Origin: Kudoa neothunni
Lineage: Eukaryota > Animalia > Cnidaria
Direction: 5' to 3'
DNA length: 64,000 nucleotides
NCBI GenBank assembly: GCA_964304625.1
Contig: OZ199839.1
Coordinates: 10,899,186-10,963,185 of the forward strand
The position numbers were made by a program, and so were the translations under genes. The notes beneath the pieces were generated by a model that did no database searches, was not told the origin of the DNA, and saw only the letters and a program-made list of their open reading frames with translations. Of the stretch, positions 1 to 33,000 are shown in pieces. Every line of letters starts with the position of its first letter. Position 1 is the first letter of the stretch.

Positions 1-1903
1 CTAGAAGAAACCAGTGGTAGCTTCGAGGGTTACGAAGAGAAAAAATTTGGTATTATATTAAAATAAATTTATCAATCACAATTTATAGCTATCGTTGAGG
101 CTGCTGGTGCAAGTACACTCTTTTCTTCACCCACAACAGTGGGCATAACTTTTAGTCCTTCTCCTTATGATCCCAGTAATAATGGTGCAGTAAAATTCAA
201 CATTTGTGATTTGAAACACTTTCATGCTGACAAACCAAGGCCAACTTCCGGAGGAGGAATTGTAACCCAATGCACGAATGAAAAATGTGGTACAACATGT
301 GCGACAAGTTCAGTTATAAAGGGACTAACTGCAGGAAAAGCATACATTATTGAGATTACACCAGCAAATTTAGACAGTTACACCGATTTTAAAGAATACT
401 TGTTTTTTAGAACACGTAACTAATCGTATTTTTTTATAATTAAATAATAAATATGAATAGTTGCATCATTAAACTTGGCTGTCACATCTCCTACACCAAC
501 CGACGTGAGTGTTGCAGTCAAAGCGATTGATGGTGACGTAGGCAAGACAGTTAACGAACCAACTTGCTCATATTACATAAGTGAAACTGGTAAGGAATCA
601 TTTGTAGAAGCCGTCTGCGAGGATAGTGTTCCATGTAGAGGATTTTGTAGAGAAACAAAGAACCTGATCAATTTAAATCCTAAAACAAGTTACGATATTA
701 AGGTCGTTTCAAACAAAGATTATGGTATTAAAAAATATGAAAGTGTTACCACTAGTATATCTTGATAATCGAAATTAAATTTAACTCACTTATTAGCATT
801 TTCAACTCTTACACTTTCACGTACGTTCTTGGACAAGGGTTTTAAAGTGGTTGGTACCTTAACATCACCATATCCAAAAGCAGTATGTCATTATAAAATT
901 AATGTTAAAAACGATCAAACTTCAAAAGAGGTTTATTCATGTCCAGCAGTTGTTTCACCCACTCCAAATGTTAGTCCGCCAAATTCCAACAATGGACAAT
1001 CATCTAGTTCATCTCAACAACAGAAACTACAGGCATCTCATTTATTCGGTGATAATAAATTAGCTGAGATATATGTTGCGAGAGCGGCTACTACTGAGAA
1101 TAATGTTGGAAGTTCGTCTACAACCACTCAAAATACAAATGTTCCGCCAAAGATCCCATCATGCACCGAACCACCGCTTTGCACTAAGATATTATTTAGT
1201 GAGGGGTACGAAGCGGATAAAGAATACGAGGTTTTGGTGACAGCTGCAGAAAGATCAACCGAAGTTCTTATAAATATTCCTAAAAGTATTTTAAAAATAT
1301 AATTTTATCTACTTTTTTTAATATTAATAATTACTATAGATATGCCTCCAGAACAGCCTAGTGAGGCAGAAAGAGAAATAGCTGTTATCATTATAAGGGA
1401 GGGAGATACACTAAAAATCTCTTCATTGCTACCCAAGGGTAGGGATGATAACGCAAAATGCAAATGGATATTAAGAAACACGAGCGAGACATCACAGTTA
1501 ATCGTGAAAAAATGCGAGACAGAACGTACTAATGGTTGCGTTCTTCCGACGTGCAAGTCCTTCACAATTGAAAACATACGTGACGAAAATGATTATCATT
1601 TAACCGTCATTTTGGCTAATGATTCTAAAGTCTTTGGTATCGGGAAAATTAAACGAGGTATTTAAAATCGAAGGAATAGTAATATAATTGATTATTTAGG
1701 AGAAACTTCAAATCAATCAAGGTAAATGAATTAGTAATAACAAACTATAATATATATTTAGGGCGAGTTCGACCATGTATTAGACTTGTATTTGATGTTG
1801 TAAAGTTAAATCATACTTTAGGATCATTTCTATTGTCATTCCAGTTGTTATCATTGTGGTAGGAGTTGGATTTTATTTTGGTTACTGGAAGAATAAAGGA
1901 TAA
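1..1903 (+). CDS. Cys-rich FN3-like repeat type I membrane protein, array copy 1 (5'-truncated by window edge)
   Basis: Exons ..49, 89-415, 461-754, 797-1285, 1340-1657, 1700-1721, 1762-1776 and 1822-1903 join in frame across GT-AG introns of 39-54 nt. The protein ends in the TM helix MIISIVIPVVIIVVGVGFYFGYW-KNKG*. Paralogous to 8009-10941 and 13606-16535. Confidence 0.88.
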
Positions 1904-2655
1904 GCATAGACAGCTCAAATATTCATTCAGAAATTAATTTATTACTCTCCTTTATTTTTAATTATTTCACATATTTTATATTTTAAAATAATATTTTTCG
2001 CAAAATTATAACAATACATTGTTATTTTATTTAAGGAAGTTTCCATTATATGATTAATATAACCTATAAATAATATTTATAGTTTAAGAGTATACAATCA
2101 ACGACGGTTATTGCATAGGTGAATATTGCGCTCTTTTTGTTTTGTCATTATTTTATCATTTCATAGACCCCAATTTTATCTTCTAAGTGTTTTAAGCTAT
2201 TACGGAAGCATTTAAAATTATTTTAGAATTATTTATGACTAATGGAAATGGATATCGCACTGTTCATTTTTATTGCGTATTAACATTCAATTCCCCTATG
2301 TGGTTGTTCGATTGATATTACACATTAATTTCGGTCACCATTAAATTTAACAAAATCTTATAATCAACGTGTATTATTATTATTTGGTACTTTTTTTTAA
2401 AATAAGTATAACGAAACTTAACGTTGTGATCAATGTTTTTCAAATTTTTTATTAATAAAAATGATTCAGCCTTAATTTATTTTGCAATAAAAATTGAACT
2501 ATTAGTATATGTAGAGAAGAGATATTTTTCATAATTATAAATTTTATCCACATGCATAGATTTATTAGTACCTTGGTTTCATTACATGCTCTTTATATCT
2601 GAACAGATTCGTTTATTATAAACTAAAGTGTGGTTGTCGGAACTTAAATTAAAAA
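1904..2655 (+). repeat. 3' flank of array unit, duplicated at ~10942-11694 (shorter version after copy 3, ~16536-16670)
   Basis: Direct sequence similarity, with scattered substitutions, to the region downstream of copy 2. Confidence 0.85.
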
Positions 2656-3184
2656 TTATGATAATAGTCCATATATTGTAAGCTTTCAGTATTAGATCGT
2701 TTTAACGTTAAATTTAATCTAATATATTGAATAGAGTATATAATAAGAATACGTAATGAATTTTTCCATTAAACGTGGAGTTAATTGTCGATAAAAGTAA
2801 AAAAAATATTAAAAGGCAATTGAGAACATATTTTTATTCCAAATAACCCATAGCGGTTTTTCGTTTCCTTTTCGGCACCGTCTTCACACTTCTGTATAGC
2901 GTCAATAACTTGTTTAATAACGTAATCCTAGGTTATATGATTCATATGTATAATTTCCATATAATACAAAATTATTCATTAAATATATTTTACATTGTGC
3001 CATATACTGTTCTATATTATCCTTGTAACATGACAACTTACAAATAAAACAGGAATTCCATTTGACTGTTATTTAAAAATATTATATTTTTAATGTATAG
3101 TTATATATTAACAAAGTCTAATATAAGTGAAAATCAAAAAAAAAGATATAAGAATGCTAAAAATAATTATTACAAAAACAATGC

Positions 3185-3780
3185 CGAAAAAGGGGCATGA
3201 TAAACCACCGATGACCGATTTCTCAATTGATCTTTTTGTTGATCTCGCAAACAAAGCTTTAAGATGACGTACAGAAACTTAGTTGATGCTATCGAAAATA
3301 TTGATAGCTTATCAAATACAGTTGATTTAGTAGTCATACCCCCAAATCTTTTGAGTAAATTGACTGATAATCGGTAAGAATTCGTCCACAGAGAGTACAA
3401 CAACATTGATATTGGAATTGTTCCCGATGTATGTGGCGAAGTAGAAATCTTTGTTAACTTCGAAAATGATGAAAATATCGAAAACGGCGGAGCCTTATGA
3501 TGTAAAATCACTCCCCGTCGCAATTTATACATGAACGCAATAAATGAAGACATGGTAACCTGTAACCCATAGTACAGACATTATCTATAATGATTTCTCA
3601 CACATGTATGAGTCGTATGAAAATTATTTTAAATTTTTTGCCGAAAACTTGTCATTACCAGTCGTAAAAAAACAAATTAGCTCGTGTTATGTCGAAGAGG
3701 CCTAGTGTAATATGCGCTATAAAGAGACCAACACTAAATGACCAATAATCGAGCAAGCGTGATGTTCCTAAATATTACAG
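3185..3780 (+). mobile_element. Degenerate piggyBac (PGBD2/3-like) transposase N-terminal remnant
   Basis: Broken + strand reading YRNLVDAIENIDSLSNTVDLVVIPP...LTD...GIVPDVCGEVEI resembles the 'V-I-PP...TD-E...P-DV-G-VE' N-terminal motif of PGBD2/3-type transposases. Stops and frameshifts are present. Confidence 0.5.
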
Positions 3781-3939
3781 TAAGTGACGGGTCGTGGGCA
3801 TCTGTCATGGTTTGATAGCTTACACAATACTGTTATTAATTTAATTGTATAAAAGAATCACAGTTATAGTAAATTATGTGACCTTTAATTTTAATTGGTT
3901 TCGAATAAGAGTTTGCATAATTTTACGACTCGTGGGCAC

Positions 3940-4190
3940 TTGAAGAGAACCAAACAGTTTCGTTCCCTGAAAGATAAAGTGGATATAATCCAATATTATG
4001 AGAGAACATCAAATTAGAAAAATAGCAAAATAAAAGCCCTCAATTATTTTAGCTGAAAATCTCTGTCCTCATTGAATAGTATTTTGAATAATAAAGAATG
4101 TATAATGAAGGCTCATAATGAAAGACATGCTACAAAAAGCCGAAAAACATTAAAAAAGGTCATTTCGATACGCTATACCAGTTGTTATCA
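3940..4190 (+). mobile_element. Tigger/pogo transposase remnant (CENP-B-type N-terminal HTH)
   Basis: KRTKQFRSLKDKVDIIQYYE...SSLNSILNNKECIMKAH...SRKTLKK matches the HTH pattern at the N-terminus of Tigger transposases. The reading is frameshifted. Confidence 0.6.
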
Positions 4191-4743
4191 ACGGGGGATC
4201 CGCGGCAGGAATACATGTGAAGATTTTTTATTGCCATCTAAATTTAAATAATGTATCCGATATGTTCGGCGATGTCGAATATGAACAATTTTGTCCATTT
4301 TAATTAATTATTATTCTCGTAACACATACCTAAATTTTTGAATAATTTTAATAATAAATATTTTAAACCTATTGATTTGTTAAAACCCGACTGAAAGTTG
4401 ATAGTGGTGCTCCAAGAATCTGAGTTCGTTTTTGAATGCAAGAGCCCGAATTTCATCAAATTTTATCGTTTCGTCTTATTTCCTTTAAAAATTTTTTGCT
4501 TAGCAAGCATTTTGCGATATCAGGGATTGTGTTATTCGGTCGCAATTGAAATGACAGATGGTGATGACCCATGCTTGCTTTCACTAATGAACAATATCCA
4601 AAAAGTTAACGCCCTTGATTAAGGTTTCTACGCGTGCCACGTCACATTTCTTATCACGCATTTTTACAATCTTATCATTACTTCTTTTTTTTTATTAGAG
4701 AATTTGAGTTTTCTTATATAGTTTATTAAAATTTCATAATAAA

Positions 4744-6507
4744 TGTCAGCTATTGTTGGTTGTTTTTTAAAGAAACAAACGAAGATCGAATGTCCAAATG
4801 CAATTTTCGCGGAGTTAAAATAGTTTTTAAAGATATGGCAGGTAAGCGAACGACTGGCCGTATAAATAGACATCTATTAAAAGCTCATAATATAACAAAG
4901 AACAACTATAATGAATTCAGTAATTTTATTTATAATTGATAGTGTTTATTTTTTTAAAGTTAAGAAAAAAAAATTCATTGGATTCATACGTAAAAAAATC
5001 TGGTAGAAACTATACACTTGCCAGTTTAATTGCTGTCGACGGATTCACAATTCTTAAATTTGTGGAAGTATGTTTATAAAGCAGGGCAGGCTTTTGAAAA
5101 ATTTGGTCATGAAATGCCACAAAACCCGTAAAAAATAACCAATATAATTAAATCAGAGGTCACCGAAAAAAATGAAATTATAAAACAAATTCAATCGGAG
5201 TATGAAGAAGGCAAGTGGTTAACGGTTATTATAGACGAATGGACCGTTGGCACTCAAAAAAAGGTTCATGACTGTTGTCTTGGAATCCGATATTAAAACA
5301 ATGTTTTGAAGACAAGCTGTTTGAATTCAACGTTAACGTTGATTCATTGGTCGCCGTTGTTTTAGATGGTGCATCGGCTATGGAAGATTTTCAGAAAAGT
5401 ATTTCCTGCATACCACAAGTTTGTCTTTCTCTCTCTCGGGGTTCTTTTAGAAATCAAAGGGGTTATTGGGAGTGATAACGATGTGGTTGATAAATGTTCC
5501 TCCAATGATTTATCAGATGTTGATATAGAAATTATTATTGATAGTAACTTATCGTGCATAATATTTTTTACATTTATAACTAGGTAACTATAGAGGAGCT
5601 GTGTTTCGAATGAAGAAAATGATAAAATTTTTCAAACATTCGCCATTGCTACAAGAGAGTTTGGATAAACGCAGGCTCAGTGGAAGCAAAAAACCCCTGC
5701 GTTTAATCATACATAGAAACCAGATGGAACCGCCTTTACGATGCAATGGAGAGATTTTTAGAATTATGTCAGGAGATAAGGAAATTTGAGAAGAAATTTT
5801 GTAATTTATCGACATTAATTTTGATATTTAGAAAAAACTAATAGAGTATCCGCCTGCTTCAGATATAATTCTTCTGGAAGATATAAAAATATCACTGCCC
5901 CTATAGTCCTTTTATTAAATGTATTATCAAAGGAAACAATCAATTATAAAGACACTCATGCAATTTTTAAATTTGTCTTGGACAATTTATACCAACAAAA
6001 CGACTCACACGTCACATCAGTTGTTTTTTCATGGGATCACAGAATCAGAGAACACCGAAACGTTGTTTTGGCAACTACTGTTTCATATTTTAATAATAGT
6101 TAAGAATTTAGTAATAAAGTCGACTTTCTCATTGTAGTAAAGAGAACTGCTATAATTTTATACAGCAGCAGCATGCGAGACTATTTACATCTGAAAACAA
6201 TGTTGACGTTGAGGACGTTCCACTTAACCCCATTACCAGTCAACATCAAGATCTTCATTCTGGGTTTCAAAGTTTCATAGCCTCAAGAAAAAATGAGAAA
6301 ATCATAAAAGCCTAAATTTTAAATTCTTCAAAGATTTTTTATCTTGAAGGAGTTTTAAATGATAACCATAAATTGCTAAAAAATGCGCTTGAAAGTGTAC
6401 AACCCTCTAGCGTTCTGTCTGAGAAGGTATTTTCAAGTTCCGGAAAATGTTTGAGAAAAAGAAAGGCTAGAATTAGTGATAAGCTGCTGGATACTCTTAT
6501 GATTTAA
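4744..6507 (+). mobile_element. hAT-superfamily transposase pseudogene (BED finger + DDE + C-terminal dimerisation domain)
   Basis: BED-like CWLFFKE..SKCNF and TTGRINRHLLKAH; TLASLIAVDGF; WLTVIIDEWT; VAVVLDGASAM..QVCL; KFFKHSPL..ETRWN; C-terminal VQPSSVLSEKVFSSSGKCLRKRKARISDKLLDTL. Many stops and frameshifts. Confidence 0.88.
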
Positions 6508-8008
6508 TCTATAAACAATTATTTTAATAAAATAAAAATAAAAACTATTATAACAAAATTATCAATTTATTTGTTTGACACTATTTCAATTCTACGTTAT
6601 TTATTTTATAATTCTGGATTTCGTTAAAAAATGATAGGTTGGCGTTTTTTCATAATCAAAAATGAAGGTATTTAAATTAAATTAATTGTCGCGCTATTGT
6701 TAGAAATCTTTAATTTTTACAATTAGTACACAACAAATTTCGTACTTTTTTTAGTGTATTATTTTCTTAAACTTGTCTAAATTAAAGCGTATTTGAAGTA
6801 ATTATATATTTTTTAGAAAGTTCAGAGTAAATCGAATCAATAATTTTTTTGGTTAGTTGAAGTTTAAAAACTGTAATTTTCTAATCTTTATCTTAATAAT
6901 ATCGTGTTGTTGATGAACAAAACTAAAGGTTAAGATCTGTTCGGTTTTCGGTTTTGCCAAAAACCGAGACTGATTTTAAAGTGTATTTATTAATTCATAT
7001 AATTAAGCTTCTATTATCAATTCATGCAGTGTTTTAAACAAAGAATGACTAAAATAAGTTTCCAATCTACCACATTTTTACATACTTTGATAATGGTAAA
7101 GTATTCGGCATCTAAAAAACGTCCTCTTGCACATGTTTTTTCGAATTTCTTTTTTCATGATTCTTGATTATAAAATAAAGGAATATGGAGAGCAAAAATT
7201 CAGCTCAAAATAATAACTTCAAAATTTTGAGAATTATTCATCCGGACGCGGTTGGATACACGTGCAATGCCCATCTTCTTTCAACAAAAATTGAATTATT
7301 TTGTTTCTTTCTTAGTTATTAACTCAAAAGTTATTTATTATTACTATTTAGATTTTTACTATTGATATATGGAAATTTTATATAAACCAACTTTAAAAAT
7401 ATACTTATTGCAGATTTCGGAAAATTAACGCATGTTTCATTATAATAAAAATAATTTTAGAATTTTAAAAATGGACCTTGATGTCGTACGATTTTTTTTA
7501 GTTTATAACTTTTTTTATTAAAATTTAGAAACCTAATTTTTTAAAATGATAAAATTTAATTTTTTTACCGTGTAGTATCTGTAATATATTTAAAAAAATT
7601 CTTAAGCTACGTTTATATTGTTTTATAAGTTTTTTTATATGTCAAAATTCGGTAACAAATTCAACAAAATGTACGAATTGAGAATATTACAAGATGTAAA
7701 CACAATATGTTAACTAAGGTCATTATTTTTATCGGTATACATATAATTGACTAAAACTAATAAATTTATAGAAATAACAATTTTTGGAATTTATGGTAAT
7801 AGTATTTTTATTTAATTTTTATCTGAAATGATTCACCGCGACATTAACATAAGTCTTTTTATATTAAGGCAATTTGATTTATTACGTGTTATGCGCAACC
7901 TATAATATTTGACATTCATTAACACATGAATAGGCGTATACATACACAAATAGTTATTGTTTATTCAAACTGTATAATATAGTCGGATTTACTACATACT
8001 TTATAATT

Positions 8009-10941
8009 ATGTATAATTATTTCGCATTTTTTGCAGTGATTAGTGGAATTTTATGTAATAAATTATGTAAAATCACATTCTAACTTTATTATCATAGTTA
8101 ACGATAAATATTGTGCTGAAAACCCCCCCAAAGTCCCTGAAAAAGTCCTTTCATATCTTGTTGCAGACAACAATAAAGTGCAACTGATTTTATCTGGCTC
8201 AGTATATGGCGTGACCGATACTAAATGTCTTATCAAGAAGCAAAATGATCCCATCAGCGAGTTTACGAACATTAATACTTGTGATGGAAATGAAGCTAAT
8301 ATAACTGGGAAATGTGTTCGTACATGTACTGGAGAAAACAACAAATTGACATTCAATGCGTTATCGCCTAGAACCGAATATATTTATGTGTACTCAGGAA
8401 ATAATGCAGAAACAATAAAAGAAAATACTAAAGGTGGAGACGTTTTCGGACTTTCGATTCGTATTTTAAATTAAATTTTTCCGTATAATAAATTAAATAT
8501 AGCACTTTTGGTAAATCCATTTATCACAATTTCCACAGATGATTCTCAGAAACTAAAGCTTGAAGCTAAAACATGTGCAAAAGTGAATTGCCCGATTTAT
8601 TACAAAGGTGTGAAATATGCTGAAGGTACGGCGGGAGGAGACTGTGATACTCCTAATACAGCAAATACAGTTGATTTTGACATCATGATACCTCATTATG
8701 AGATGAAATGCATTAATTATCCCAGTTTCTTTTACGAAATGCCGAATCCATACATGAAAAAGAATATTGATGTTTATAAACCACAATATTATGTAGCATA
8801 TAAGACCGACGATAAAACAAAATATCTCTTAAAATTTACCAATCCATTCCCAGCTGAGATATGTTTGTTCAATATTAAAGATGCGGCGACTGATGCTTCT
8901 GGAAGTACGGCGAGTTATGCATCAGTGTGTGGAGGTGAAGACGGAAAGAAGTGTTTTGCACCCTGCAATAATGTCGAACTAATACTCGCTGAAACTAAAC
9001 CTATTGTTAAAATATTAATTCAAACTAGGCATCATAAACTAGAAGAAACCAGTGGTAGCTTCGAGGGTTACGAAGAGAAAAAATTTGGTATTATATTAAA
9101 ATAAATTTATTAATCACGATTTATAGCTATCGTTGAGGCTGCTGGTGCGAGTACACTCTTTACATCACCCACAACAGCGGGCATAACTCTTAGTCCTTCT
9201 CCTTATAATCCTAGTGATGATACAGTTAAGTTCACCACTTGTGCTTTGAAACATTTCCCCGCCGACATACCGAGGCCAACTGCCAATGGAGCAACAACGA
9301 AATGCACAACCAATGATCCATGTACCAATGATTGTGCAACCAGTCACGTTATAAAAGACCTACTAACTGCAGGGAAAGCATACATTATTGAGATTACACC
9401 AGCAAGCATATCTAACCATAATGACTTTAAAGAATACTTGTTTTTCAGAACACGTAACTAATCGTATTTTTTTATAATTAAATAATAAATATGAATAGTT
9501 GCATCATTAAACTTGGCTGTCACATCTCCTACACCAACCGACGTGAGTGTTGCAGTCAAAGCGATTGATGGTGACGTAGGCAAGACAGTTAACGAACCAA
9601 CTTGCTCATATTACATAAGTGAAACTGGTAAGGAATCATTTGTAGAAGCCGTCTGCGAGGATAGTGTTCCATGTAGAGGATTTTGTAGAGAAACAAAGAA
9701 CCTGATCAATTTAAATCCTAAAACAAGTTACGATATTAAGGTCGTTTCAAACAAAGATTATGGTATTAAAAAATATGAAAGTGTTACCACTAGTATATCT
9801 TGATAATCGAAATTAAATTTAACTCACTTATTAGCATTTTCAACTCTTACACTTTCACGTACGTTCTTGGACAAGGGTTTTAAAGTGGTTGGTACCTTAA
9901 CATCACCATATCCAAAAGCAGTATGTCATTATAAAATTAATGTTAAAAACGATCAAACTTCAAAAGAGGTTTATTCATGTCCAGCAGTTGTTTCACCCAC
10001 TCCAAATGTTAGTCCGCCAAATTCCAACAATGGACAATCATCTAGTTCATCTCAACAACAGAAACTACAGGCATCTCATTTATTCGGTGATAATAAATTA
10101 GCTGAGATATATGTTGCGAGAGCGGCTACTACTGAGAATAATGTTGGAAGTTCGTCTACAACCACTCAAAATACAAATGTTCCGCCAAAGATCCCATCAT
10201 GCACCGAACCACCGCTTTGCACTAAGATATTATTTAGTGAGGGGTACGAAGCGGATAAAGAATACGAGGTTTTGGTGACAGCTGCAGAAAGATCAACCGA
10301 AGTTCTTATAAATATTCCTAAAAGTATTTTAAAAATATAATTTTATCTACTTTTTTTAATATTAATAATTACTATAGATATGCCTCCAGAACAGCCTAGT
10401 GAGGCAGAAAGAGAAATAGCTGTTATCATTATAAGGGAGGGAGATACACTAAAAATCTCTTCATTGCTACCCAAGGGTAGGGATGATAACGCAAAATGCA
10501 AATGGATATTAAGAAACACGAGCGAGACATCACAGTTAATCGTGAAAAAATGCGAGACAGAACGTACTAATGGTTGCGTTCTTCCGACGTGCAAGTCCTT
10601 CACAATTGAAAACATACGTGACGAAAATGATTATCATTTAACCGTCATTTTGGCTAATGATTCTAAAGTCTTTGGTATCGGGAAAATTAAACGAGGTATT
10701 TAAAATCGAAGGAATAGTAATATAATTGATTATTTAGGAGAAACTTCAAATCAATCAAGGTAAATGAATTAGTAATAACAAACTATAATATATATTTAGG
10801 GCGAGTTCGACCATGTATTAGACTTGTATTTGATGTTATAAAGTTAAATCATACTTTAGGATCATTTCTATTGTCGTTCCAATTGTTATCATTGTAGTAG
10901 GAGTTGGATTTTATTTTGGTTACTGGAAGAATAAAGGATAA
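8009..10941 (+). CDS. Cys-rich FN3-like repeat type I membrane protein, array copy 2 (~846 aa, 10 exons)
   Basis: Exons 8009-8054 (signal peptide MYNYFAFFAVISGIL), 8098-8460, 8503-9087, 9127-9453, 9499-9792, 9835-10323, 10378-10695, 10738-10759, 10800-10814 and 10860-10941. Total 2541 nt, in frame, all introns GT-AG. Modules end in FN3-like L-x-P-x-T-x-Y-x-I/V-x-V motifs. Confidence 0.9.
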
Positions 10942-11694
10942 GCATAGACAGCTCAAATATTTATTATGAAATTAGTTTATTACCCTCCTTTATTTATAAT
11001 TATTTTAATATATTTTATATTTTAAAATAATATTTTTCGCAAAATTACAACAATACATTGTTATTTTATTTAAGGAAGTTTCCATTATATGATTAATATA
11101 ACCTATAAATAATATTTATAGTTTAAGAGTATACAATCAACGACGGTTATTGCTTAGGTGAATATTGCGCTCTTTTTGTTGTGTCATTATTTCATCGTTT
11201 TATAGACTCCAATTTTATCTTTTAAGCGTTTTAAGCTATTATGGAAGCATTTAAAATTATTTTAGAATTTTTTATGACTAATGGAAATGGATATTCCGCT
11301 GTTCATTTTTATTGCGTATTAACATTCAATTCCCCTATGTGGTTGTTCGATAGATATTACACACTAATTTCGGTCACCATTAAATTTAACAAAATCTTAT
11401 AATCAACGTGTATTATTATTATTTGGTACTTTTTTTTAAAATAAGTATAACGAAACTTAACGTTGTGATCAATGTTTTTCAAATTTTTTATTAATAAAGA
11501 TTCAGCGTTAATTCCTTTTGCAACAAAAGTTGATCTATTAATATATGCAGAGAAGAGATAATTTTCATAATTATAAATTTTATCCGCATACATAGATTTA
11601 TTAATACCTTGGTTTCATTACATGCTCTTTATATCTGAACAGATTCGTTTATTATAAACTATAAGTGTGGTTATCGTATATTAGATTAAAAATT

Positions 11695-13293
11695 GACAGT
11701 GGATATTCTCATGGAAACGAATAACTCCTCCGTTATAGGCGATATTTTGAATCTGACTTCATATTTGAATTGAGCTACTTTTGATTGAATTTTTTATGGA
11801 AAAATTGTGTGAAATTTAAAGAATAAAAATTTAACACTTTGTTTGCCCTATTTACATTGTTCACTAGTAGTACACTCACGTTTTTGAGTCTAATATTATG
11901 TAATATAAACATTATAATTGAAATGAAAAATAAAAACATTTATTAATAAGTAGAAACTGTTCTGTTCGTGCATTCTGTGTCACCCACCATGTCTGAATAT
12001 GTGCGTGAATCCTATTTGGTTGTGGGGCGTTCTATTACGTGAGACTATTTCTAAATTTTAGAGAACTTTGAAATAACTGAAATCTGTACGACATGTTTAT
12101 ATATTACATTAAATTGTAGAAGAGAAATTTAAGCTCCTGTAAGGTATAAAATACCAATCGCATGGAATAAGTCTGAAAAGTGGTGCCATTATTGCTTCCT
12201 ATGAAGCGCTTTTAAATTGACTTGTTCAAACTTATACCTTTTATTAACAAATATTATTTTACTGTTAAAATTTCAAAGGTGATGATTTCGAGGAAATTTT
12301 TTGGGCGGACAGCTAAACAACCATGACTAGTGGATAAGTTGATCAATTCTTCATTGGAGTGAAAATTGATTTTTCTGAGCTATTAAAATTACACATCCCT
12401 CAGTATCGGGAAACAAATGTTTACAACCTTAAAATGATATTTTTCATAACAATTCAAAATGTTCAAGGACGAATTAACCGTAATTTTAACTCCAACATTG
12501 TTTATTATAATACTTACTACATTCGTTCGTTGGCTCGCTTTACAAAAGCCAAACAAACGTACCCCAAAAATCACCATTCAAAAATTTTCATTTTATACAT
12601 TTACCCATTGAGACGATAATAGAGGGATTAATGCAGAAAATTTAGAATCACCCTTCTTGTTAAACATTGATAAATGAGTTTAAATTAATAAATATATAGG
12701 TTTACTCTTAAATTTGAACTCATAGATTCCTATATTTACAAATAGGCATCATAAAAACCTTCCTCATACTTCTGATTATAGTAAATACATTTGTAGGGAT
12801 GAAACAACGAAAATTCCCCAAAATTATGGTACAATCTTATAGATACATATGAAAAGTGATTTACATCGGTGTAAAATAGCTTTAATCCAATTGATATTCA
12901 TTAAATAACGATAATTATGTTAAATTTATATTAAAAAATGTTTAGATAGAAACGTACATACTTCGTAGGAGATTGGGGAGGACTTATTCTAAGTTAAACT
13001 GTGTGCGTTGAGACGTATTAAACTAAAGGTTTCTAACCACCATTAGATATATCCACATTTTCATTTCAATTATAATGTTTATATTACATAATATTAGATT
13101 TAAAAAGGTGAGTGAACTACTAGTGAACAATGTAAATAGGGCAGACAAAGTATTGAATTTTTATTCTTTAAATTTCGAACAGTTTTTTCACGAAAAAATT
13201 AGATTAAAAATATCTAAATTCAAATATGATATCAGATTTGAAATATCATCTATAACAGAGAAGTTATTCGTTTCCATGAGAATAGCCACCGCC
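11695..13293. mobile_element. Non-autonomous DNA element with ~235-bp imperfect terminal inverted repeats
   Basis: 11695-~11930 (gacagtggatattctcatggaaacgaataac...cattataattgaaatgaaaa) is the imperfect reverse complement of ~13057-13293 (ttttcatttcaattataatg...gttattcgtttccatgagaatagccaccgcc). It begins where similarity to the copy-1 3' flank stops. Confidence 0.8.
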
Positions 13294-13605
13294 TATTTTA
13301 AAGATAATAAATAAGTTTTATCTTTCATGCGAATGTGATTAAATGAATATTTCGCAACATCTCTGTTGACTGTATTTCTTTATTTATATGAAACATTAAA
13401 TTTTTTTAATCGAATTGTATGTAAAATATTTCATAGCAACGATAAATTAATTATTTTTATTTTATGCATTTTTGATTATTTACATATTTTGTGAAACCTA
13501 TAATATTTTGTCTTCATTAACACATGAATAGGCTTATACATACATGAATAGTTATTGTTTATTCAAACTGTGTAATACAGTCTGATTTACTTCCTATTTA
13601 CAAAT

Positions 13606-16535
13606 ATGGATAATCATTTGGCATTTTTTGTTGTAATTATTGGCCTATTATGTAATGAATTATATGAGATCACATTCTAACTTTATAATCATAGTTAATT
13701 ATAAATATTGTGCTGAAATCCCCCCAAAAGTCTCTGAAAAAGCTCTTTCATATCTTATCGCCGACAACAATAAAGTTCAACTTATTTTTTCTGGCTCAGT
13801 GTATACACCTGGCTCCCAAAAATGCCTTATAAAAAAAAACGATTCTACCGGCAGATTTATTGATATTAATACGAATAATGTAAAATGTGACACAAGAGTA
13901 ACTGGCAAATGTATCCTTACATGTACTGAAGAAAACAACAAATTGACATTCAATGAGTTATCGCCTAGAACCGAATATATTTATGTATACTCAGGAAATG
14001 ATGCAGAAACAATAAAAGTAAATACTAAAGGTGGAGATGTTTTCGGTCTTTCGATTCGTATTTTAAATAAAATCTTTTTTTATAATAAATTAAATATAGC
14101 ACTTTTGGTAAACCCAATTATCACAATTACTACAGATGCTCAGAAACTAAAGCTTGAAGCTAAAACATGTGCAAAAGTGGATTGTCCCATATATTACAAA
14201 GATGTGAAATATGCAGCTGGTACTGGAACAGATAACTGTGAAACTGCTAATACAGCAAATACAGTTGATTTTGACATTATGATACCTCATTATGAGATGA
14301 AATGCGTTAATTATCCCAATTTCTTTTACGAAATGCCAAATCCATACATGAAAAAGAATATTGACATCTATAAACCACAATATTATGTGGCATATAAAAC
14401 CGACGATAACAAAAAATATCTCTTAAAATTTACCAATCCATTCCCAGCTGAAATATGTTTTTTCAGTATTAAAGATGGAGCTGATAGCACCGATGGGAAT
14501 ATTGCTAATTATGCATCAGCGTGTGGAAATGTGGCCCCAAAGGAATGTTATGCACCTTGCGATAATGTCGAACTAACGCTCGCCGAAACTAAACCAATTG
14601 TTGAAATATTAATTCAAACTAGGCATCATAAATCAGGAAAAACTGGTTCAAATATAGAAGGTTATACAGAGAAAAAATTTGGTATTATATTAAAATAAAT
14701 TTATTAATCATAATTTATAGCTATCGTTGAGGCTGCTGGTGCAAGTACACTCTTTTCTTCACCCACAACAGTGGGCATAACTCTTAGTCCTTCTCCTTAT
14801 AATCCTAGTAATAATGGTGCAGTTAAATTCACCACTTGTGATTTAAAACATTTTCCCGCCGACATACCGAGGCCAACTGCCAATGGAGCAACAACGAAAT
14901 GCACAACCAATGATCCATGTACCAATGATTGTGCAACCAGTCACGTTATAAAAGACCTAACTGCAGGGAAAGCATACATTATTGAGATTACACCAGCAAG
15001 CATATCTACTCATAATGGCTTTAAAGAATACTTGTTTTTCAGAACAAGTAACTAATCGTATTTTTTTATAATTAAATAATAAATATGAATAGTTGCATCA
15101 TCAAACTTGGCTGACACATCTCCTACACCATCCGACGTGAGTGTTGCAGTCAAAGCGATTGATGGTGACATAAGCACGGCAGATACCGAACCAACTTGCT
15201 CATATTACATAAGTGAAACTGGTAAGGAATCATTTGTAGAAGCCGTCTGCGAGGATAGTGTTCCATGTAGAGGATTTTGTAGAGAAACAAAGAACCTGAT
15301 CAATTTAAATCCTAAAACAAGTTACGATATTAAGGTCGTTTCAAACAAAGATTATGGTATTAAAAAATATGAAAGTGTTACCACTAGTATATCTTGATAA
15401 TCGAAATTAAATTTAACTCACTTATTAGCATTTTCAACTCTTACACTTTCACGTACGTTCTTGGACAAGGGTTTTAAAGTGGTTGGTACCTTAACATCAC
15501 CATATCCAAAAGCAGTATGTCATTATAAAATTAATGTTAAAAACGATCAAACTTCAAAAGAGGTTTATTCATGTCCAGCAGTTGTTTCACCCACTCCAAA
15601 TGTTAGTCCGCCAAATTCCAACAATGGACAATCATCTAGTTCATCTCAACAACAGAAACTACAGGCATCTCATTTATTCGGTGATAATAAATTAGCTGAG
15701 ATATATGTTGCGAGAGCGGCTACTACTGAGAATAATGTTGGAAGTTCGTCTACAACCACTCAAAATACGAATGTTCCGCCAAAGATCCCATCATGCACCG
15801 AACCACCGCTTTGCACTAAGATATTATTTAGTGAGGGGTACGAAGCGGATAAAGAATACGAGGTTTTGGTGACAGCTGTAGAAAGATCAACTGAAGTTCG
15901 TATAAACATTCCCAAAAGTATTTTAAAAATATAATTTTATCTACTTTTTTTAATATTAATAATTACCATAGATTTGCCTCCAGAACAGCCTAGTGAAGCA
16001 GAAAGAGAAATATCTGTTATCATTATAAGGGAGGGTGATACACTAAAAATCTCTTCATTTCTACCCAAGAGTAAGGATGATAACGCAAAATGCAAATGGA
16101 TATTAAGAAACACAAGCGAGACATCACAGTTAATCGTGAAAAAATGCGAGACAGAACGTACTAATCGTTGCGTTCTTCCGACGTGCAAGTCCTTCACAAT
16201 TGAAAACATACGTGACGAAAATGATTATCACTTAACCGTCATTTTGGCTAATGATTCTAAAGTCTTTGGTATCGGGAAAATTAAACGAGGTATTTAAAAT
16301 CGAAGGAATAGTAATATAATTGATTATTTAGGAGAAACTTCAAATCAATCAAGGTAAATGAATTAGTAATAACAAACTATAATATATATTTAGGGCGAGT
16401 TCGACCATGTATTAGACTTGTATTTGATGTTATAAAGTTAAATCATACTTTAGGATCATTTCTATTGTCGTTCCAATTGTTATCATTGTAGTAGGAGTTG
16501 GATTTTATTTTGGTTACTGGAAGAATAAAGGATAA
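13606..16535 (+). CDS. Cys-rich FN3-like repeat type I membrane protein, array copy 3 (~845 aa, 10 exons)
   Basis: Exons 13606-13651 (MDNHLAFFVVIIGLL), 13695-14057, 14100-14681, 14721-15047, 15093-15386, 15429-15917, 15972-16289, 16332-16353, 16394-16408 and 16454-16535. Intron positions and phases are the same as in copy 2. Confidence 0.9.
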
Positions 16536-17132
16536 GCATAGACAGCTCAAATATTTATTATGAAATTAGTTTATTATTTTAACATATTTTATATTTTAAA
16601 ATAATATGTTTCGCAAAATTACAACATTACATTATTATTTTATGCAAGAAAGTTTCCATTATATGATTAATTAAAACTTTAAGATATATATTCATATGAT
16701 ATTGACAGAAAAATAATTGATTAAATATATTTATAAATAATAGATATATCATTAAATCTAAATTTAATTAATTTATTTATTTATCTAAATTCAGTAAAAG
16801 CTGTTAAAATCACTTAATCCAAAATCGAATTGTTAGGATCAGATATTAATCATATTTTTCACTATTACTAATTTTTCAAAATAAAAAGTCATTAAAATTA
16901 GCACTAAAAATACAATAGGAGTAGTTTATCTTCAATGTTTTCAATTTATAAAGAAAATAATCTAAAAATTTTATCCGCGCAGATTTAAATAAGAAAACCT
17001 TGATTACACATTACACACACACACACACACCTGAGAAACGAGGACAATTTTAAATATAAAGTAACACGTCAGTTAAGTTAGCAACCAGATAAGTGAATTA
17101 ACAAAGTAATACGTAATGTATAGAAAAGGGTG

Positions 17133-27294: not shown

Positions 27295-28356
<1,062 letters not shown>

Positions 28357-28863: not shown

Positions 28864-29783
28864 TTAACCTCTCACATCCAAGGGAAAAAGTTACACGAAT
28901 ACATGGAGATGGCCGTTATAACCCCATGCTAGAATGTATTAAAATAATAAAAATTGTTGCACTTAAGATTAAGGGCATAATTATCAGCGTTATTTTTTAC
29001 ATGTTGAAATATAATAAATTCAATAGAAATAAGTAAATAATGCGTTTTTGTGACGTTCATTTGCGCACGTGCGAAGAATAGAAATAGTTATGCCTGTATA
29101 CACTTTGAATAGCGTGATAAATTAGGAATAAATTGTATTATTACTATTACTTTAACAACTACGATTTGGTTTGGTTCTCATAATCCATGATTTTATAATG
29201 AAATCTCTCTCCTGTTGACAGAAATAGGCTAAATATACAAGCTCGTACTTTATAAATTGAAATTTGACGTTATAAATTAATTTATTAATATGAAATATAT
29301 ATATATATACAGTCTAAGTATTTTTAGATCTTGAGTTTTTAAGCAATGATAAGATTGTCTAAATTAAACTTGAAACAATTATACTTAGCTCGCCACTTTT
29401 TTTTGTTGATATGTAACTGTACAAAATTATAATAATATGCACGATGCATCTGCTAGATTAAATTGGTTAATAGAATCAAGTTGTTATAGAAAAAAATAAG
29501 AATTTAAAGTACATTTATAATTTTTATTTTTCCGTAGAAAAAATTTGTTATATATTTTGACTAGCTAAACGTTATTTATATGGTAGGCATGTGTGTAACT
29601 TTTTTCTTTTTTGATTTTAAGCGAAAAGATTAAACGTAAACTCCATTTTTTAAGTATTTTTAAAAGCACCACTGTACTATAAAATACATTCAAGGAAAAA
29701 GGAAATAAAATATTTTGTAAAAGTTATGGATATAACAGGCTCTGATTGGTCACAATGGCCACCTCCAGGTATTTGAGGGTTGA
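28864..29783. mobile_element. piggyBac-like MITE, copy A (~920 bp)
   Basis: Ends TTAA-CCTCT... and ...GAGGG-TTGA. Subterminal inverted repeat AATAC(C/A)TGGAG(G/A)TGGCC. Similar along its full length to 32336-33293. Confidence 0.8.
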
Positions 29784-30026: not shown

Positions 30027-33000
30027 TTATTTCCGGTCGTTTATTATTGTATTGACAATATCCAAAGATGTTTGAATGGATTTTTGTTTGAGTTTCTCCC
30101 TTCTGACCAATAAAAAGCACAAGTTTCTCAACTAAAGATAACTCAAATGAGAAAATGCTTACAACAACAGATCTTAATGGGTTTACTTTTTCAAATTCAA
30201 TCCTTATATCCATAAGAAGACGCGCTAATTTGCGCACATAAACTTGATCACTGTGAAGCTAAAAATCCCTATCTAGATGATGAATAATCTAGCCAAATTA
30301 CCTCTTGAAATCGAATAAAAGCAACAGGGGATACAAATGGAGCAAAACCATTTAACTATATAACACAATTAAGTAGATTTTAAATAATTATAAAAAAAAG
30401 AGGACACTTACTTCACGTTTATACAGGTAATATTCCAACAGTAGGTGAGTGGAAACAGTTGAAATTGAAAGACATTTTTCGAGTTGGTCACAATCTATCA
30501 GCGACTTTAATTCGTCATTACTAGAATATTAAAATTGTTAAAAGGAGCATGTAGTTAATTTTCTGATATTTACTTGACATATTTTACACTTGGTAAAATA
30601 TTTTTTTCAGGCTTTTTTGGTGATTTGTTAACATGTTTGCTGCAAAATACCTTTAAAATAATATCATAGATATACCATTAACTCATATGCACAACAGCCA
30701 AAGAATACCTTCATAACATGACCATTTTTGTTTGAAACTTTTTTCAATTCGAGTTTATGTTGTAAAGCACATGTAATGTGAAACGATGTGAGACATTTGC
30801 GCTCCTAAAATTGGTCAAATGTCATTACTTCAAGGAAATTCAATCTCATACGTTACACTGTACACAGCCACTATTCCTCTTACAAAAACAGCATGTTAAT
30901 TTCTCTCGTTTTTTCTAGACGAAAATAATTTAGTTCATGGTGGGGGATAATTATCGAGTTGAAATTGAAGAATACATAGGCTTTAGATATGGTGATTCCA
31001 TTAGATTTGATCGGATCTTTAAAAATCACTTCAGGAATCCAATGAGCACATATAATATGCACCCACGATTGGGGAGAAGTTCTATTTCTAGAATTCAATC
31101 ATAATAAAAATAATTACTTTCTTAGGTGTGGAAATAAACTCAAAATGTAGTAAAAAATTATAAATAACATTATTTAATGAGATGACAAACAAAAAATAAT
31201 AAAGATAATTACGCTACTCTTTTCATCGGACCACCACTCTGATGACACATAATGCATTGAGGACTATCATTGTGTTCACACGCTTCGCAAAACCAGCTCC
31301 CTTCAGGAATTTCATTCACACCATAGCAAAACTAAATTATTTCAGCAGATAGATAAAAGCAATCTGTGTGCAGCACGTATCTTACTTGGTGCACTCCAAG
31401 ATTGCATTTATCGCAGAACAGAATCTTATTGTCTTCAAAGGAGTGCGGCTATATGCAAAAATTATATTTCCGCTCAAAAAACGATATTCTAATGAATTAT
31501 AACAAACAAGATGTGTGCAAATATTTTATTCAAAATTGGTCATGTAAAAATATTCGTCTTAATTAATGAAAACTAAAATGGGCCAAACAAAGGATTGATT
31601 AAAAATACAAATAAAATATTATTTTACATAAAAAATGAACTCCAAAATAGCATAAATACTTTGGTTAAGTTATTTTTAAACGTTACTGTTAAAATCAATC
31701 CCTTCAGTTCCATTTTACATTTAAGCATACATATTTGGTGAATACCACAAAGATGTATATAATTCATTATTTATTGGTTCGGTTTTAAGTAAAGTTATGA
31801 AGCTTTAACCATTTAATATTGAAAAAAAATCAATTTAATTTTTATAATGTATTAATTAGAATAGAAATTATTAGAACTCACATTTGTGATATTCCACTGT
31901 TAATAATACATTTGGCCAATTAAAATAATGATTTTGCTGTAAATTTTTATTCAAGTTATGAAAACTACGTTCCAAATTTAAAAAGTATATTTATAATATT
32001 TAAAAATGGATTATAGTTTAATTAATATTATATACAATAAATATTGTAATAATTATACTAAAATATTATTATTTTGTTGTCTTATTCTTTCGATGACTAA
32101 GAGAAAAATTTAATATAGATAATCTTATCTAATAAGTATTGAATTTTGTCATTTATTGATAGAGAAATAATAATACAAATTAAATAATTAATTGCGCTTT
32201 CATTTAACGCATGCACAATTATATTTAAAAAGTCATACATTCATTTATGCACTTATAATAAAAGTTTTTATGAATTTTATTGAATTTTTATGTGCAACGA
32301 AAAACATATTACTCAAAATTTCAAGCGACCCTAACAACCTCTGAACACCCAAGGAAAAAAGTTACACGAATACCTGGAGGTGGCCACTGTGACCACATGT
32401 AAAAATGTATTAAAATAATAAAAATTGTTGCACTTAAGGTTAACAGCATAATTATTAGAGTTATTTTTTACATGTTTAAATATAATAAGTTTAATAAAAA
32501 TAAGTAAATAATGCATTTTTGTGACGTCCATTTGCGCGAATGCGAGGAACAGGAGTAATTATGCTCGTATACATTTTGAATATTGTGAAAAATTAGAAAT
32601 CGATTGTTTTATTATTGCTTCATTTTTCGCATTTTCTTCTTATTATTATTAATTTAACAGCTATATTTTGGTTTTGTTCTCAAAATCCATGATTTTATTA
32701 GGAACTATCTTCCCTCCTGTTGACAGAAATATACTAAAGGTATAAATCCGTGCTTTATAAAGTGAAATTTGGCATTATAATTTAATTTATTAATAAGAAG
32801 CATATATATATATATTTATATAATCTAAGGATTTTAAAAATTTGAATTTTTCAGTTATGATAAGATGGTCCAAATCAAATTTTAAACAACGATTTTAATT
32901 TACTACTTTTTGTTGATATTTAATTTAACAAAATTATAATAATATGCGCGATGCATCTGCTAGATTAAATTAGTTAATAGAATGAATTTGTTATAGAAAA

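What the first reader, a model, noticed from the sequence alone, without database searches (positions are those of the whole stretch)
1..16570. Copies are patchwork mosaics: nearest-neighbour relationship switches at least four times
Seen: (i) at the end of exon 3, copy 1 = copy 2 (LEETSGSFEGYEEK) while copy 3 has SGKTGSNIEGYTEK. (ii) In the 5' part of exon 4, copy 1 is closest to copy 3 (FSSPTTVG..SNNGAVKF..CDLK) versus copy 2 (FTSPTTAG..SDDTVKF..CALK). (iii) In the middle of exon 4, copy 2 = copy 3 (PADIPRPTANGATTKCTTNDPCTNDCATSH) versus copy 1. (iv) Over exons 5-9, copy 1 = copy 2 for ~1.3 kb by eye. (v) In the last intron, TM exon and 3' UTR, copy 2 = copy 3 (gtcgttccaattgtt...gtagta). Inference: segmental gene conversion or unequal crossover shuffles loop cassettes between paralogues and generates combinatorial diversity.
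Basis: seen in the sequence. Interest (0 to 1): 0.82.

Follow-up and report, generated by a model that had tools for sequence, protein, structure and literature searches.

The report
Mosaic surface-protein genes in fish parasite
Four neighbouring copies of a surface-protein gene, probably from the tuna parasite Kudoa neothunni, are true patchworks of one another made by repeated copying of short DNA stretches between copies: a well-known process, seen here in a very large, undescribed gene family.

Summary
There are four tandem paralogues, not three. The fourth lies 24 kb upstream of the window, and the window start cuts copy 1. All four are intact 10-exon genes of about 846 codons: signal peptide, six Cys-bearing domain exons, two microexons and a TM exon.

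Across the four copies, 125 informative sites fall into blocks with at least 8 topology switches (0 of 100,000 permutations match). Per-segment AU tests reject a single tree. Copies 1 and 2 are identical over 1,391 nt, next to an exon-4 patch only 68-79% identical.

Silent-site divergence ranges from 0.045 (exons 5-7) to 0.75 (variable patches), and dN/dS never exceeds 1. Recurrent short-tract gene conversion is therefore well supported. Selection for diversity is not shown.

Raw-read contigs from the source sample reproduce copy 3's 5' half exactly, but linkage on single long reads could not be tested.

The family has at least 150 loci, an FN3-like predicted fold, no Pfam match and almost no database relatives. 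Assembly statistics match Kudoa neothunni. The scan has already reported the same phenomenon elsewhere in this genome.

The parts
1..1903 (+). Copy 1 (c1), the part inside the window: last 49 nt of exon 3 through the stop codon. The gene starts at window -1038 (G000:C2:10898147). The repeat unit runs to 2657.
   Evidence: exons at -1038..-993, -949..-575, -532..49, 89..415, 461..754, 797..1285, 1340..1657, 1700..1721, 1762..1776, 1822..1903. GT/AG is kept and the frame is open.
8009..10941 (+). Copy 2 (c2), complete 10-exon gene. The repeat unit is 7805..11694.
   Evidence: exons 8009..8054, 8098..8460, 8503..9087, 9127..9453, 9499..9792, 9835..10323, 10378..10695, 10738..10759, 10800..10814, 10860..10941. 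The gene is intact.
13606..16535 (+). Copy 3 (c3), complete 10-exon gene of 846 codons. The repeat unit is 13296..16696.
   Evidence: exons 13606..13651, 13695..14057, 14100..14681, 14721..15047, 15093..15386, 15429..15917, 15972..16289, 16332..16353, 16394..16408, 16454..16535.
409..1799 (+). Tract of 1,391 nt exactly identical between c1 and c2 (c2: 9447..10837), from the exon 4 end into intron 9, introns included. Within it, 582 nt are identical in c1, c2 and c3 (c3: 15187..15768).
   Evidence: The run of 84 concordant polymorphic sites was reached by 0 of 5,000 permutations.
1801..2117 (+). c1 switches partner within one base of the previous tract. From here it is identical to upstream copy c0 for 318 nt (intron 9, TM exon, 3' UTR), while c2 = c3 over 10638..10982 = 16232..16576.
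   Evidence: 9 of 9 informative sites support c0c1|c2c3; AU p 0.001 for the other two topologies.
128..350 (+). Exon-4 hypervariable patch in c1 (c2 9166..9388, c3 14760..14982). c2-c3 are 95-97% identical; c1 is 68-79% identical to the others.
   Evidence: There is no closer donor anywhere else in the genome. It maps to a Cys-rich loop region of the model.
13412..13666 (+). c3 segment grouping with c1 (topology c0c2|c1c3): 5' flank, exon 1, intron 1.
   Evidence: 21 of 22 informative sites. AU 0.000 for the alternatives.
13676..13769 (+). c3 segment grouping with c2 (c0c1|c2c3): intron 1 and the 5' part of exon 2.
   Evidence: 10 of 12 sites; alternatives AU 0.011 and 0.002.
13789..13917 (+). 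c3 segment grouping with c1 again (exon 2). Support is weaker.
   Evidence: 10 of 15 sites; alternatives AU about 0.03.
14180..14596 (+). c3 segment grouping with c1 (most of exon 3).
   Evidence: 16 of 18 sites; alternatives AU at most 0.002.
14634..14665 (+).
   Evidence: 10 of 10 sites; alternatives AU 0.015.
14705..15016 (+). c3 segment grouping with c2 (intron 3 and most of exon 4).
   Evidence: 21 of 22 sites; alternatives AU 0.004.
15018..15186 (+). c3 segment grouping with c0 while c1 = c2 (exon 4 end, intron 4, 5' part of exon 5). The switch from the previous segment is resolved to 2 alignment columns.
   Evidence: 10 of 10 sites; alternatives AU 0.000.
2658..7804 (.). 5.1-kb spacer between c1 and c2 that the c2-c3 spacer lacks. 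It holds a dispersed repeat and a degenerate hAT-like remnant.
   Evidence: Dimer_Tnp_hAT at E 0.0035, below Pfam's cutoff, so a weak lead only.

Best explanation
The locus is a tandem cluster of four intact paralogues (c0-c3) of a type-I membrane protein. Each has a signal peptide, six Cys-bearing domain exons joined by phase-1 introns of 39-54 nt, two conserved microexons, a TM exon and a 6-residue tail.

The copies have repeatedly exchanged short stretches (tens of nt to about 1.4 kb) by non-allelic homologous recombination, mostly interlocus gene conversion. Exchange starts and ends in conserved framework blocks. The 3' half has been homogenised very recently (c1 = c2 over 1,391 nt). Strongly diverged patches in exons 2-4 have either escaped conversion or been moved as blocks, so each copy carries a different combination of old variant patches.

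Shown: the mosaic, its statistical significance, the intactness of the genes, and the same signal in two other arrays of the family.

Inferred: the mechanism (conversion rather than crossover), the surface location, and any benefit of the variant combinations.
For: - Four units are found by self-BLAST.
- Informative-site patterns cluster: 100 of 124 adjacent pairs agree against 44.4 expected (0 of 100,000 permutations). GENECONV-like longest concordant runs are beyond all 5,000 permutations for c1-c2, c2-c3, c1-c3 and c0-c1.
- Segmentation gives 8 topology switches.
- AU tests per segment prefer B, A, B, (A), B, C, A, C, star, A, and reject the alternatives at p <= 0.03 in 8 of 10 segments. 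Summed lnL is -7162.1 for per-segment best trees against -7265.7 for the best single topology.
- Patches of 32-320 nt have other topologies on both sides, and partner handovers are resolved to 1-2 nt.
- dS varies 17-fold along one gene: 0.045 in exons 5-7, 0.215 in the exon 2-4 framework, 0.75 in the variable patches. One divergence time cannot produce this.
- All copies keep open frames and GT/AG sites.
- The variable patches have no closer donor elsewhere in the genome, so the exchange is local.
- A PHI-like test is also significant in the C1 and C2 arrays (0 of 2,000 each).
- Logan contigs from the source sample's reads match c3 exactly over 13405-14091, 14422-14697 and 14773-14998 at about 9x, and one of them spans a switch region.
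- The assembly is HiFi-based with QV 48.5, if it is the K. neothunni assembly of PMC12239612.
Against: - No single long read spanning a whole unit could be inspected. The contigs come from the same reads as the assembly, so they are not independent.
- Parasite read coverage was only about 7-9x.
- The contigs do not show c3's private variants in the 3' half. The contig there carries the majority letters, which fits bubble popping.
- The segments for the AU tests were chosen from the data, so those p-values are optimistic.
- Conversion cannot be told from repeated unequal crossing-over using one haplotype.
- One contig joins c3 from 13456 onward to sequence that is absent from the assembly. This remains unexplained.
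Confidence: 0.85

Rival explanations
1. Assembly or consensus chimera. At low coverage, reads from near-identical paralogues were mixed during error correction or consensus, creating false mosaics and the false 1,391-nt identity.
For: Parasite k-mer coverage was only about 7 and the genome came from a meta-assembly of host-plus-parasite reads. The read contigs do not confirm c3's private 3' variants. One contig has a 5' junction that is absent from the assembly.
Against: Most switches lie in the 5' half, where copies differ by 10-30%, so HiFi reads of 10+ kb are unambiguous there. Read-derived contigs reproduce c3 there with 0 differences at single-copy depth, including across a switch. The same mosaic signal appears in two other arrays. 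All four copies keep perfect reading frames and splice sites, which random chimeras might not. The reported QV is 48.5.
Confidence: 0.05
2. No exchange at all: one duplication history, with strong rate heterogeneity and convergent changes in the loops.
For: Divergence is very uneven and concentrated in loop-like patches.
Against: Rate variation does not change topology, yet the three possible 4-taxon topologies are each strongly preferred in different contiguous blocks. Introns and silent sites follow the same blocks. 1,391 nt of exact identity, including five introns, sits beside a patch at 68-79% identity.
Confidence: 0.02
3. Mainly unequal crossing-over and re-duplication of hybrid genes (reciprocal exchange with copy-number change), rather than non-reciprocal conversion.
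For: Tandem direct repeats with uneven spacing (24 kb, 9 kb, 5.6 kb) are substrates for unequal crossover. The 5' flank and exon 1 of c1 and c3 are 95-100% identical, as expected if a hybrid unit was duplicated.
Against: A single crossover gives one breakpoint per event. Here short internal patches (32, about 100, about 170 nt) are flanked on both sides by other topologies, and the spacers between units are not homologous. Many rounds would be needed.
Confidence: 0.1
4. An adaptive variant-surface-antigen system. Selection by the fish immune system maintains and re-assorts divergent loop patches, and the family is used for antigenic variation.
For: The family is very large (at least 150 exon-3-like loci of 344 candidates). 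The architecture is secreted and TM-anchored. Variability sits in Cys-framed loop regions family-wide. Mosaicism is found in three arrays. Antigenic variation is reported in myxozoans with its mechanism unknown (preprint 10.64898/2026.02.11.705288).
Against: dN/dS is below 1 everywhere, 0.70 in the patches, and dS there is also high, as expected for old unconverted tracts with relaxed constraint. There are no expression, localisation or population data. The arrays are not confined to chromosome ends.
Confidence: 0.2

Closest known systems
Interlocus (ectopic) gene conversion among tandem paralogues in multigene families (general phenomenon; established knowledge, not tested here against any one example)
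   Same: Mosaic identity blocks, alternating tree topologies, long perfectly identical tracts beside old divergent tracts, and breakpoints in conserved sequence.
   Different: Nothing in the mechanism appears different. The host family and organism are new.
Pneumocystis jirovecii msg surface-glycoprotein genes, whose mosaicism comes from recombination among paralogues (PMC10622565, PMC5676039; titles and abstracts seen)
   Same: A large family of surface proteins in a host-restricted parasite, with paralogues that are mosaics of one another.
   Different: msg genes are subtelomeric and described as part of an antigenic-variation system. Here the arrays are chromosome-internal or dispersed, and no expression control or expression data are known. 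The proteins are unrelated.
Candidate variable surface protein families of the myxozoan Sphaerospora molnari (VSP-like, RIFIN/STEVOR-like; preprint 10.64898/2026.02.11.705288)
   Same: Expanded, lineage-restricted TM surface-protein families in a myxozoan, proposed for immune evasion.
   Different: The architectures differ: those have CXXC-rich VSP-like ectodomains. The present family has an FN3-like predicted fold, no Pfam match and only 15 unnamed relatives among 1.84 billion representatives. The term 'gene conversion' does not occur in that preprint's main text.
Fibronectin type III domain proteins
   Same: The exon-4 domain model aligns to FN3 domains almost exclusively (VIA Z 5.8-6.7, rmsd about 3.0-3.5 A over 80-87 of 108 residues; Foldseek TM up to 0.56). 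It has one domain per exon with phase-1 introns.
   Different: No sequence-level match to Pfam fn3 or to any PDB chain. There is an extra long loop with three invariant Cys. The model is only moderately confident (pLDDT 72), and Z below 8 is within the range of common folds.
Earlier follow-up in this scan (s1-682521): mosaic FN3-like surface-protein gene on another piece of the same genome
   Same: The same phenomenon and, by its description, the same kind of family.
   Different: A different cluster. The present one adds a fourth copy outside the window, an exact 1,391-nt tract, the silent-site gradient, and tests on two further arrays.

Membership tests
Interlocus gene conversion / non-allelic recombination mosaic | Tree topology changes along the alignment, so a single tree is rejected | tested here: met
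   8 switches. AU tests reject the alternatives at p <= 0.03 in 8 of 10 segments. lnL is -7162.1 against -7265.7.
Interlocus gene conversion / non-allelic recombination mosaic | Shared-variant tracts longer than chance allows | tested here: met
   0 of 100,000 permutations (clustering) and 0 of 5,000 (longest runs, four pairs). PHI-like test, 0 of 2,000.
Interlocus gene conversion / non-allelic recombination mosaic | Short internal tracts bounded on both sides (conversion rather than a single crossover) | tested here: met
   tracts of at least 32, 99, 103, 132 and 169 nt flanked by other topologies.
Interlocus gene conversion / non-allelic recombination mosaic | Non-reciprocal transfer (the donor is unchanged) | not testable with these tools
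   This needs an outgroup cluster or several haplotypes. Only one assembly and one sample hold the locus.
Interlocus gene conversion / non-allelic recombination mosaic | The mosaic exists on single DNA molecules | tested here: inconclusive
   read-derived contigs of up to 315 nt match c3's 5' half exactly, one of them across a switch. No unit-spanning reads are available, and c3's 3' private variants are not shown.
Fibronectin type III fold | Beta-sandwich structurally superposable on FN3 domains | tested here: inconclusive
   pLDDT 72. Top hits are nearly all FN3, but Z is at most 6.7 and Foldseek E at least 0.03.
Fibronectin type III fold | Sequence match to the fn3 profile or to solved FN3 chains | tested here: not met
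   no Pfam hit and no meaningful PDB sequence hit.
Variant surface antigen families (var, VSG, msg, VSP type) | Large multigene family of secreted or membrane-anchored proteins | tested here: met
   at least 150 loci scored of 344 candidates; hydrophobic N-terminus and a 22-residue hydrophobic segment before the tail YWKNKG. This was read from the sequence; no predictor was run.
Variant surface antigen families (var, VSG, msg, VSP type) | Excess amino-acid change in the variable regions | tested here: not met
   dN/dS is 0.70 in the patches by a crude pairwise count that ignores recombination. A 9:0 nonsynonymous to synonymous count in exon 5 is not significant.
Variant surface antigen families (var, VSG, msg, VSP type) | Switching or mutually exclusive expression, and surface exposure to host immunity | not testable with these tools
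   The RNA run laid (X10) had no reads on the locus. The genome paper reports very few parasite RNA reads.
Variant surface antigen families (var, VSG, msg, VSP type) | Subtelomeric clustering (typical of several of these families, not universal) | tested here: not met
   arrays lie 0.6-2.2 Mb from contig ends, and many loci are dispersed along all three large contigs.

The most novel reading that the evidence does not exclude
This family of at least 150 FN3-like TM proteins is the variable surface coat of Kudoa. Recombination between paralogues, in the germline and perhaps also during proliferation in the fish, creates new patch combinations that help the parasite avoid antibody recognition. 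This would be a metazoan counterpart of the mosaic surface-antigen systems of protozoan and fungal parasites.
Probability: 0.15. Interest if true: 0.85.

Novelty: new member of a known kind. Interest (0 to 1): 0.45.

Why it matters
Gene conversion between tandem paralogues is ordinary. What adds value is the setting. Myxozoans are highly reduced animal parasites with about 5,300 predicted genes (PMC12239612). This unannotated family contributes at least 150 loci, which may be several percent of the gene set.

A 2026 preprint states that antigenic variation has been observed in myxozoans but its molecular basis is unknown. A very large, recombining family of secreted, membrane-anchored proteins with loop-localised variability is a concrete candidate to test. 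It would also matter for diagnostics or vaccines against fish-muscle Kudoa.

For annotation, the locus shows that these genes need manual models, because they contain conserved 22-nt and 15-nt microexons. It also shows that single-tree phylogenies of the family are not valid.

Tried and rejected
1. Donors outside the cluster. The exon-4 hypervariable patches of c1 and c2 were searched against the whole genome. The nearest non-local copies are at most 72% identical, so there is no long-range cassette donor.
2. Nematode origin. No SL1 spliced-leader sequence is present. Assembly size, N50, GC and intron length instead match K. neothunni.
3. Naming the family. Pfam on five exon ORFs gave nothing above threshold. 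The word-based homologue search gave nothing. The ESM Atlas gave only sub-threshold look-alikes at 0.82-0.83. PDB sequence profiles gave nothing meaningful.
4. Independent samples. Runs X5 and X7 (DNA) and X10 (RNA), which carry the same species label, had 2, 0 and 0 reads on the locus. They are essentially host only, so they test nothing.
5. A first reading of X1 contig 15022-15966 as 'the c1/c2 version at double depth' was dropped. It carries c3 letters at 11 sites and majority letters at 6 c3-private sites, so it is a simplified graph path.
6. Positive selection. Pairwise dN/dS by exon and by variability class never exceeds 1, apart from ratios based on 2 silent changes.
7. Intron-specific conservation. 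Introns 2 and 3 looked more conserved than their exons, but they simply sit inside conserved blocks that include exon sequence.
8. The joined spliced protein was never built, searched or folded. All searches and the fold were done exon by exon, by reference.

Full report
LAYOUT

Self-comparison of the window shows three homologous units: 1..2657, 7805..11694 and 13296..16696. A whole-genome search places the window at G000:C2:10899186-10963185 and reveals a fourth close copy 24 kb upstream. I fetched 30 kb upstream and redid the comparison. In window coordinates, where 0 = G000:C2:10899185, the four units are:
- c0: -25471..-21940
- c1: -1347..2657, cut by the window start
- c2: 7805..11694
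- c3: 13296..16696

The spacers are 24 kb, 9 kb and 5.6 kb and are not homologous to each other.

GENE MODEL

From ORFs, GT/AG sites and frame continuity, I derived a 10-exon model on c3 and projected it onto a four-way MAFFT alignment. All four copies keep every splice dinucleotide and an open frame of about 846 codons.

The architecture is:
- a hydrophobic N-terminus (exon 1)
- six domain exons (2-7), all entered in phase 1 and separated by introns of 39-54 nt
- two microexons of 22 and 15 nt
- a last exon encoding 22 hydrophobic residues and the tail YWKNKG

The microexons are conserved in sequence and length in distant paralogues, while the introns around them are not. A metagenomic relative (P0002) runs uninterrupted across the exon 2/3 junction, which agrees with the chosen donor. 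No RNA evidence exists. Another note of this scan (s1-692965) reads the approach to the TM exon in a surface-protein family of this genome as nested twin introns. I could not see that layout here, but the 3' model remains unverified.

THE OBSERVATION

Sliding-window identity shows these nearest-neighbour relations:
- c1-c3 96% in the 5' flank
- c2-c3 best in mid exon 2
- c1-c3 97-99% in the first half of exon 3
- c1-c2 best at the end of exon 3
- c2-c3 95-97% in mid exon 4, where c1 is 68-79% identical to the others
- c1 = c2 at 100% from the end of exon 4 into intron 9
- c2 = c3 and c0 = c1 over the last intron, TM exon and 3' UTR

The exact tracts are:
- c1 = c2: 1,391 nt (409..1799 = 9447..10837)
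- c1 = c2 = c3: 582 nt
- c2 = c3: 345 nt
- c0 = c1: 318 nt, starting one base after the c1 = c2 tract ends

STATISTICS

Among 3,261 ungapped columns, 558 vary and 125 are 2:2 informative. The three possible partitions occur 52, 49 and 24 times, so any single tree conflicts with at least 73 sites.

The partitions are strongly clustered along the sequence. 100 of 124 adjacent pairs agree, against 44.4 expected, and no permutation in 100,000 reaches this. A GENECONV-like test of the longest concordant run gives 0 of 5,000 for c1-c2 (84 sites), c2-c3 (55), c1-c3 (36) and c0-c1 (19). Penalised segmentation gives 8 topology switches.

Likelihood tests of the three unrooted trees, segment by segment, prefer B, A, B, (A, weak), B, C, A, C, star, A. 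Here A = c0c1|c2c3, B = c0c2|c1c3 and C = c0c3|c1c2. The alternatives are rejected at AU p <= 0.03 in 8 of 10 segments. The summed lnL of per-segment best trees is 103.6 units better than the best single topology. The segments were chosen from the data, so these p-values are optimistic; the permutation tests do not have that problem.

WHAT KIND OF EXCHANGE

Several tracts are short and bounded on both sides by another topology (at least 32, 99, 103, 132 and 169 nt). Two handovers are resolved to 1-2 nt. The inter-unit spacers are unrelated. This fits non-reciprocal short-tract conversion better than single unequal crossovers, though one haplotype cannot separate the two.

The hypervariable exon-4 patches have no closer relative anywhere else in the genome, so exchange is within the cluster. 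Copy c0, 24 kb away, takes part.

HOMOGENISATION VERSUS DIVERSIFICATION

| Region | dS | dN/dS |
|---|---|---|
| Exons 5-7 | 0.045 | 0.61 |
| Framework of exons 2-4 | 0.215 | 0.20 |
| Variable patches of exons 2-4 | 0.75 | 0.70 |

A 17-fold range of silent divergence within one gene is the signature of uneven conversion, not of one duplication date. Introns 2 and 3 are well conserved, but only because they lie inside conserved blocks. No class reaches dN/dS > 1. A local 9:0 nonsynonymous to synonymous count in the 5' part of exon 5 is suggestive but not significant.

The variable patches therefore behave as old tracts under relaxed constraint that conversion has either skipped or moved as blocks. 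That the combinations differ between copies is shown. That this is selected is not shown.

IS IT AN ASSEMBLY ARTEFACT?

Only four runs of one sample hold the locus. Runs of other samples with the same species label have essentially no reads on it. This fits a parasite assembled from host sequencing data.

Logan contigs of run X1 reproduce c3 with zero differences at about 9x depth over three stretches:
- 13405-14091 (three contigs)
- 14422-14697
- 14773-14998

These stretches differ from the other copies at 11-80 sites each, and the 13629-13943 contig crosses a switch region.

In the 3' half, the contig 15022-15966 carries c3 letters at 11 sites but the majority (c0 = c1 = c2) letters at 6 c3-private sites. 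This is what bubble popping does, so c3's private 3' variants are neither confirmed nor refuted.

Two of the loose ends are explained: one by a C1-array paralogue and one by a repeat copy at C3:1365741. One contig joins c3 from 13456 to 255 nt that are absent from the assembly; this is unexplained. I put the artefact reading at about 5%.

THE FAMILY AND THE ORGANISM

The exon structure is conserved in arrays at C1:16.30-16.56 Mb and C2:9.78-9.87 Mb, and in scattered genes. A profile of exon 3 finds at least 150 full-length, stop-free matches of 344 candidates on all three large contigs. A PHI-like test is significant in the C1 array (9 genes) and the C2 array (11 genes), so mosaicism is a property of the family.

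The framework is highly conserved, and variability sits between invariant Cys residues. The exon-4 domain folds, at moderate confidence (pLDDT 72), into a beta-sandwich. Its structural neighbours are almost all FN3 domains (Z up to 6.7, TM up to 0.56). The hypervariable patch lies in a long Cys-bearing, mostly non-regular stretch.

The family has almost no recognisable relatives:
- no Pfam match
- no PDB sequence match
- nothing in the word-based protein search
- only 15 unnamed singleton fragments among 1.84 billion representatives

The published assembly has 40.2 Mb, N50 12.0 Mb, GC 30.4%, median intron 49 nt and three chromosomes, built from HiFi reads of a yellowfin tuna at about 7x parasite coverage with QV 48.5 (PMC12239612). 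This matches G000: 40.26 Mb in four contigs, C2 of 12.04 Mb, about 30% GC and introns of 39-54 nt. The identification is inferred from these statistics, not proven. My term searches of that paper found 'surface' and 'gene famil' nowhere in its text, so it does not appear to describe this family.

COMPARISON AND VERDICT

In mechanism, this is ordinary interlocus gene conversion. It resembles the mosaic surface-protein families of other parasites (for example Pneumocystis msg). The defining functional features of such systems (surface exposure, switching expression, selection for change) were either untestable or not met.

The scan has already reported the same phenomenon in this genome: s1-682521 was followed up, and several first-reader notes exist, including s1-698981 on the C2 array that I tested. 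This is a solid, well-quantified new member of a known kind, in an undescribed and very large family of a poorly known animal parasite.

Noticed in passing
G000:C2:10873948-10876881 (window -25237..-22304; L003): A fourth intact paralogue (c0) lies 24 kb upstream of the window. It takes part in the exchanges: it is identical to c1 for 318 nt at the 3' end.
   Followed up: yes
Whole genome: Exon-3-like domains occur at 150 or more loci (344 candidates), nearly all as stop-free frames of about 200 or more residues, on all three large contigs. This may be several percent of the roughly 5,300 predicted genes.
   Followed up: partly
window 16332-16353 and 16394-16408 (c3); 10738-10759 and 10800-10814 (c2); 1700-1721 and 1762-1776 (c1): Two microexons of 22 and 15 nt between the last domain exon and the TM exon are conserved in sequence and length in distant paralogues, while the flanking introns are not. 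There is no RNA support. Another scan note reads this region of a surface-protein family in this genome as nested twin introns.
   Followed up: partly
window 14058-14099 (c3 intron 2), with the matching introns of c0 and c1: Intron 2 is 42 nt, in frame and stop-free in c0, c1 and c3 (open frames of 345-357 residues), but carries a stop in c2. Retaining it would add 14 residues without breaking the frame.
   Followed up: no
window 11679-11929 versus 13058-13309; also -3072..-2814 versus -1763..-1518: Inverted copies (86-89% identical) of a roughly 250-nt element lie just downstream of c2 and just upstream of c3, with a similar pair upstream of c1. A dispersed element may bound the units.
   Followed up: no
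window 2071-2657 and 11109-11694: The sequence just downstream of c1 and c2, absent after c3, is a dispersed repeat with 68-76% identical copies in both orientations on all three large contigs.
   Followed up: no
window 2658-7804: The 5.1-kb c1-c2 spacer contains short ORFs with a weak hAT dimerisation-domain hit (E 0.0035, below Pfam's cutoff) and a weak CENP-B_N hit. It is probably a decayed DNA transposon.
   Followed up: partly
window 13456 (run X1, table 7): One read-derived contig fits c3 from 13456 onward but is preceded by 255 nt found nowhere in the assembly at up to 1 mismatch. It could be a purged haplotype, an unassembled extra copy, or a host-parasite graph artefact.
   Followed up: partly
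window 15020-15051: An exact word of 31 or more nt is shared between c3 and a C1-array paralogue (L018:2380) across the invariant FKEYLFFRT end of exon 4. This is long enough to seed exchange between arrays, although no inter-array tract was found.
   Followed up: partly
window 28866-29781 versus 32336-33291: A direct repeat of about 950 nt at 80% identity, unrelated to the gene family.
   Followed up: no
window 40476-41490 (-) and 27295-27555 (-): Exons of ordinary genes: an Aa_trans amino-acid transporter (E 1.3e-17) and an adenylate kinase (E 7e-6, just under Pfam's cutoff). The 47 kb after the cluster holds few long ORFs.
   Followed up: partly
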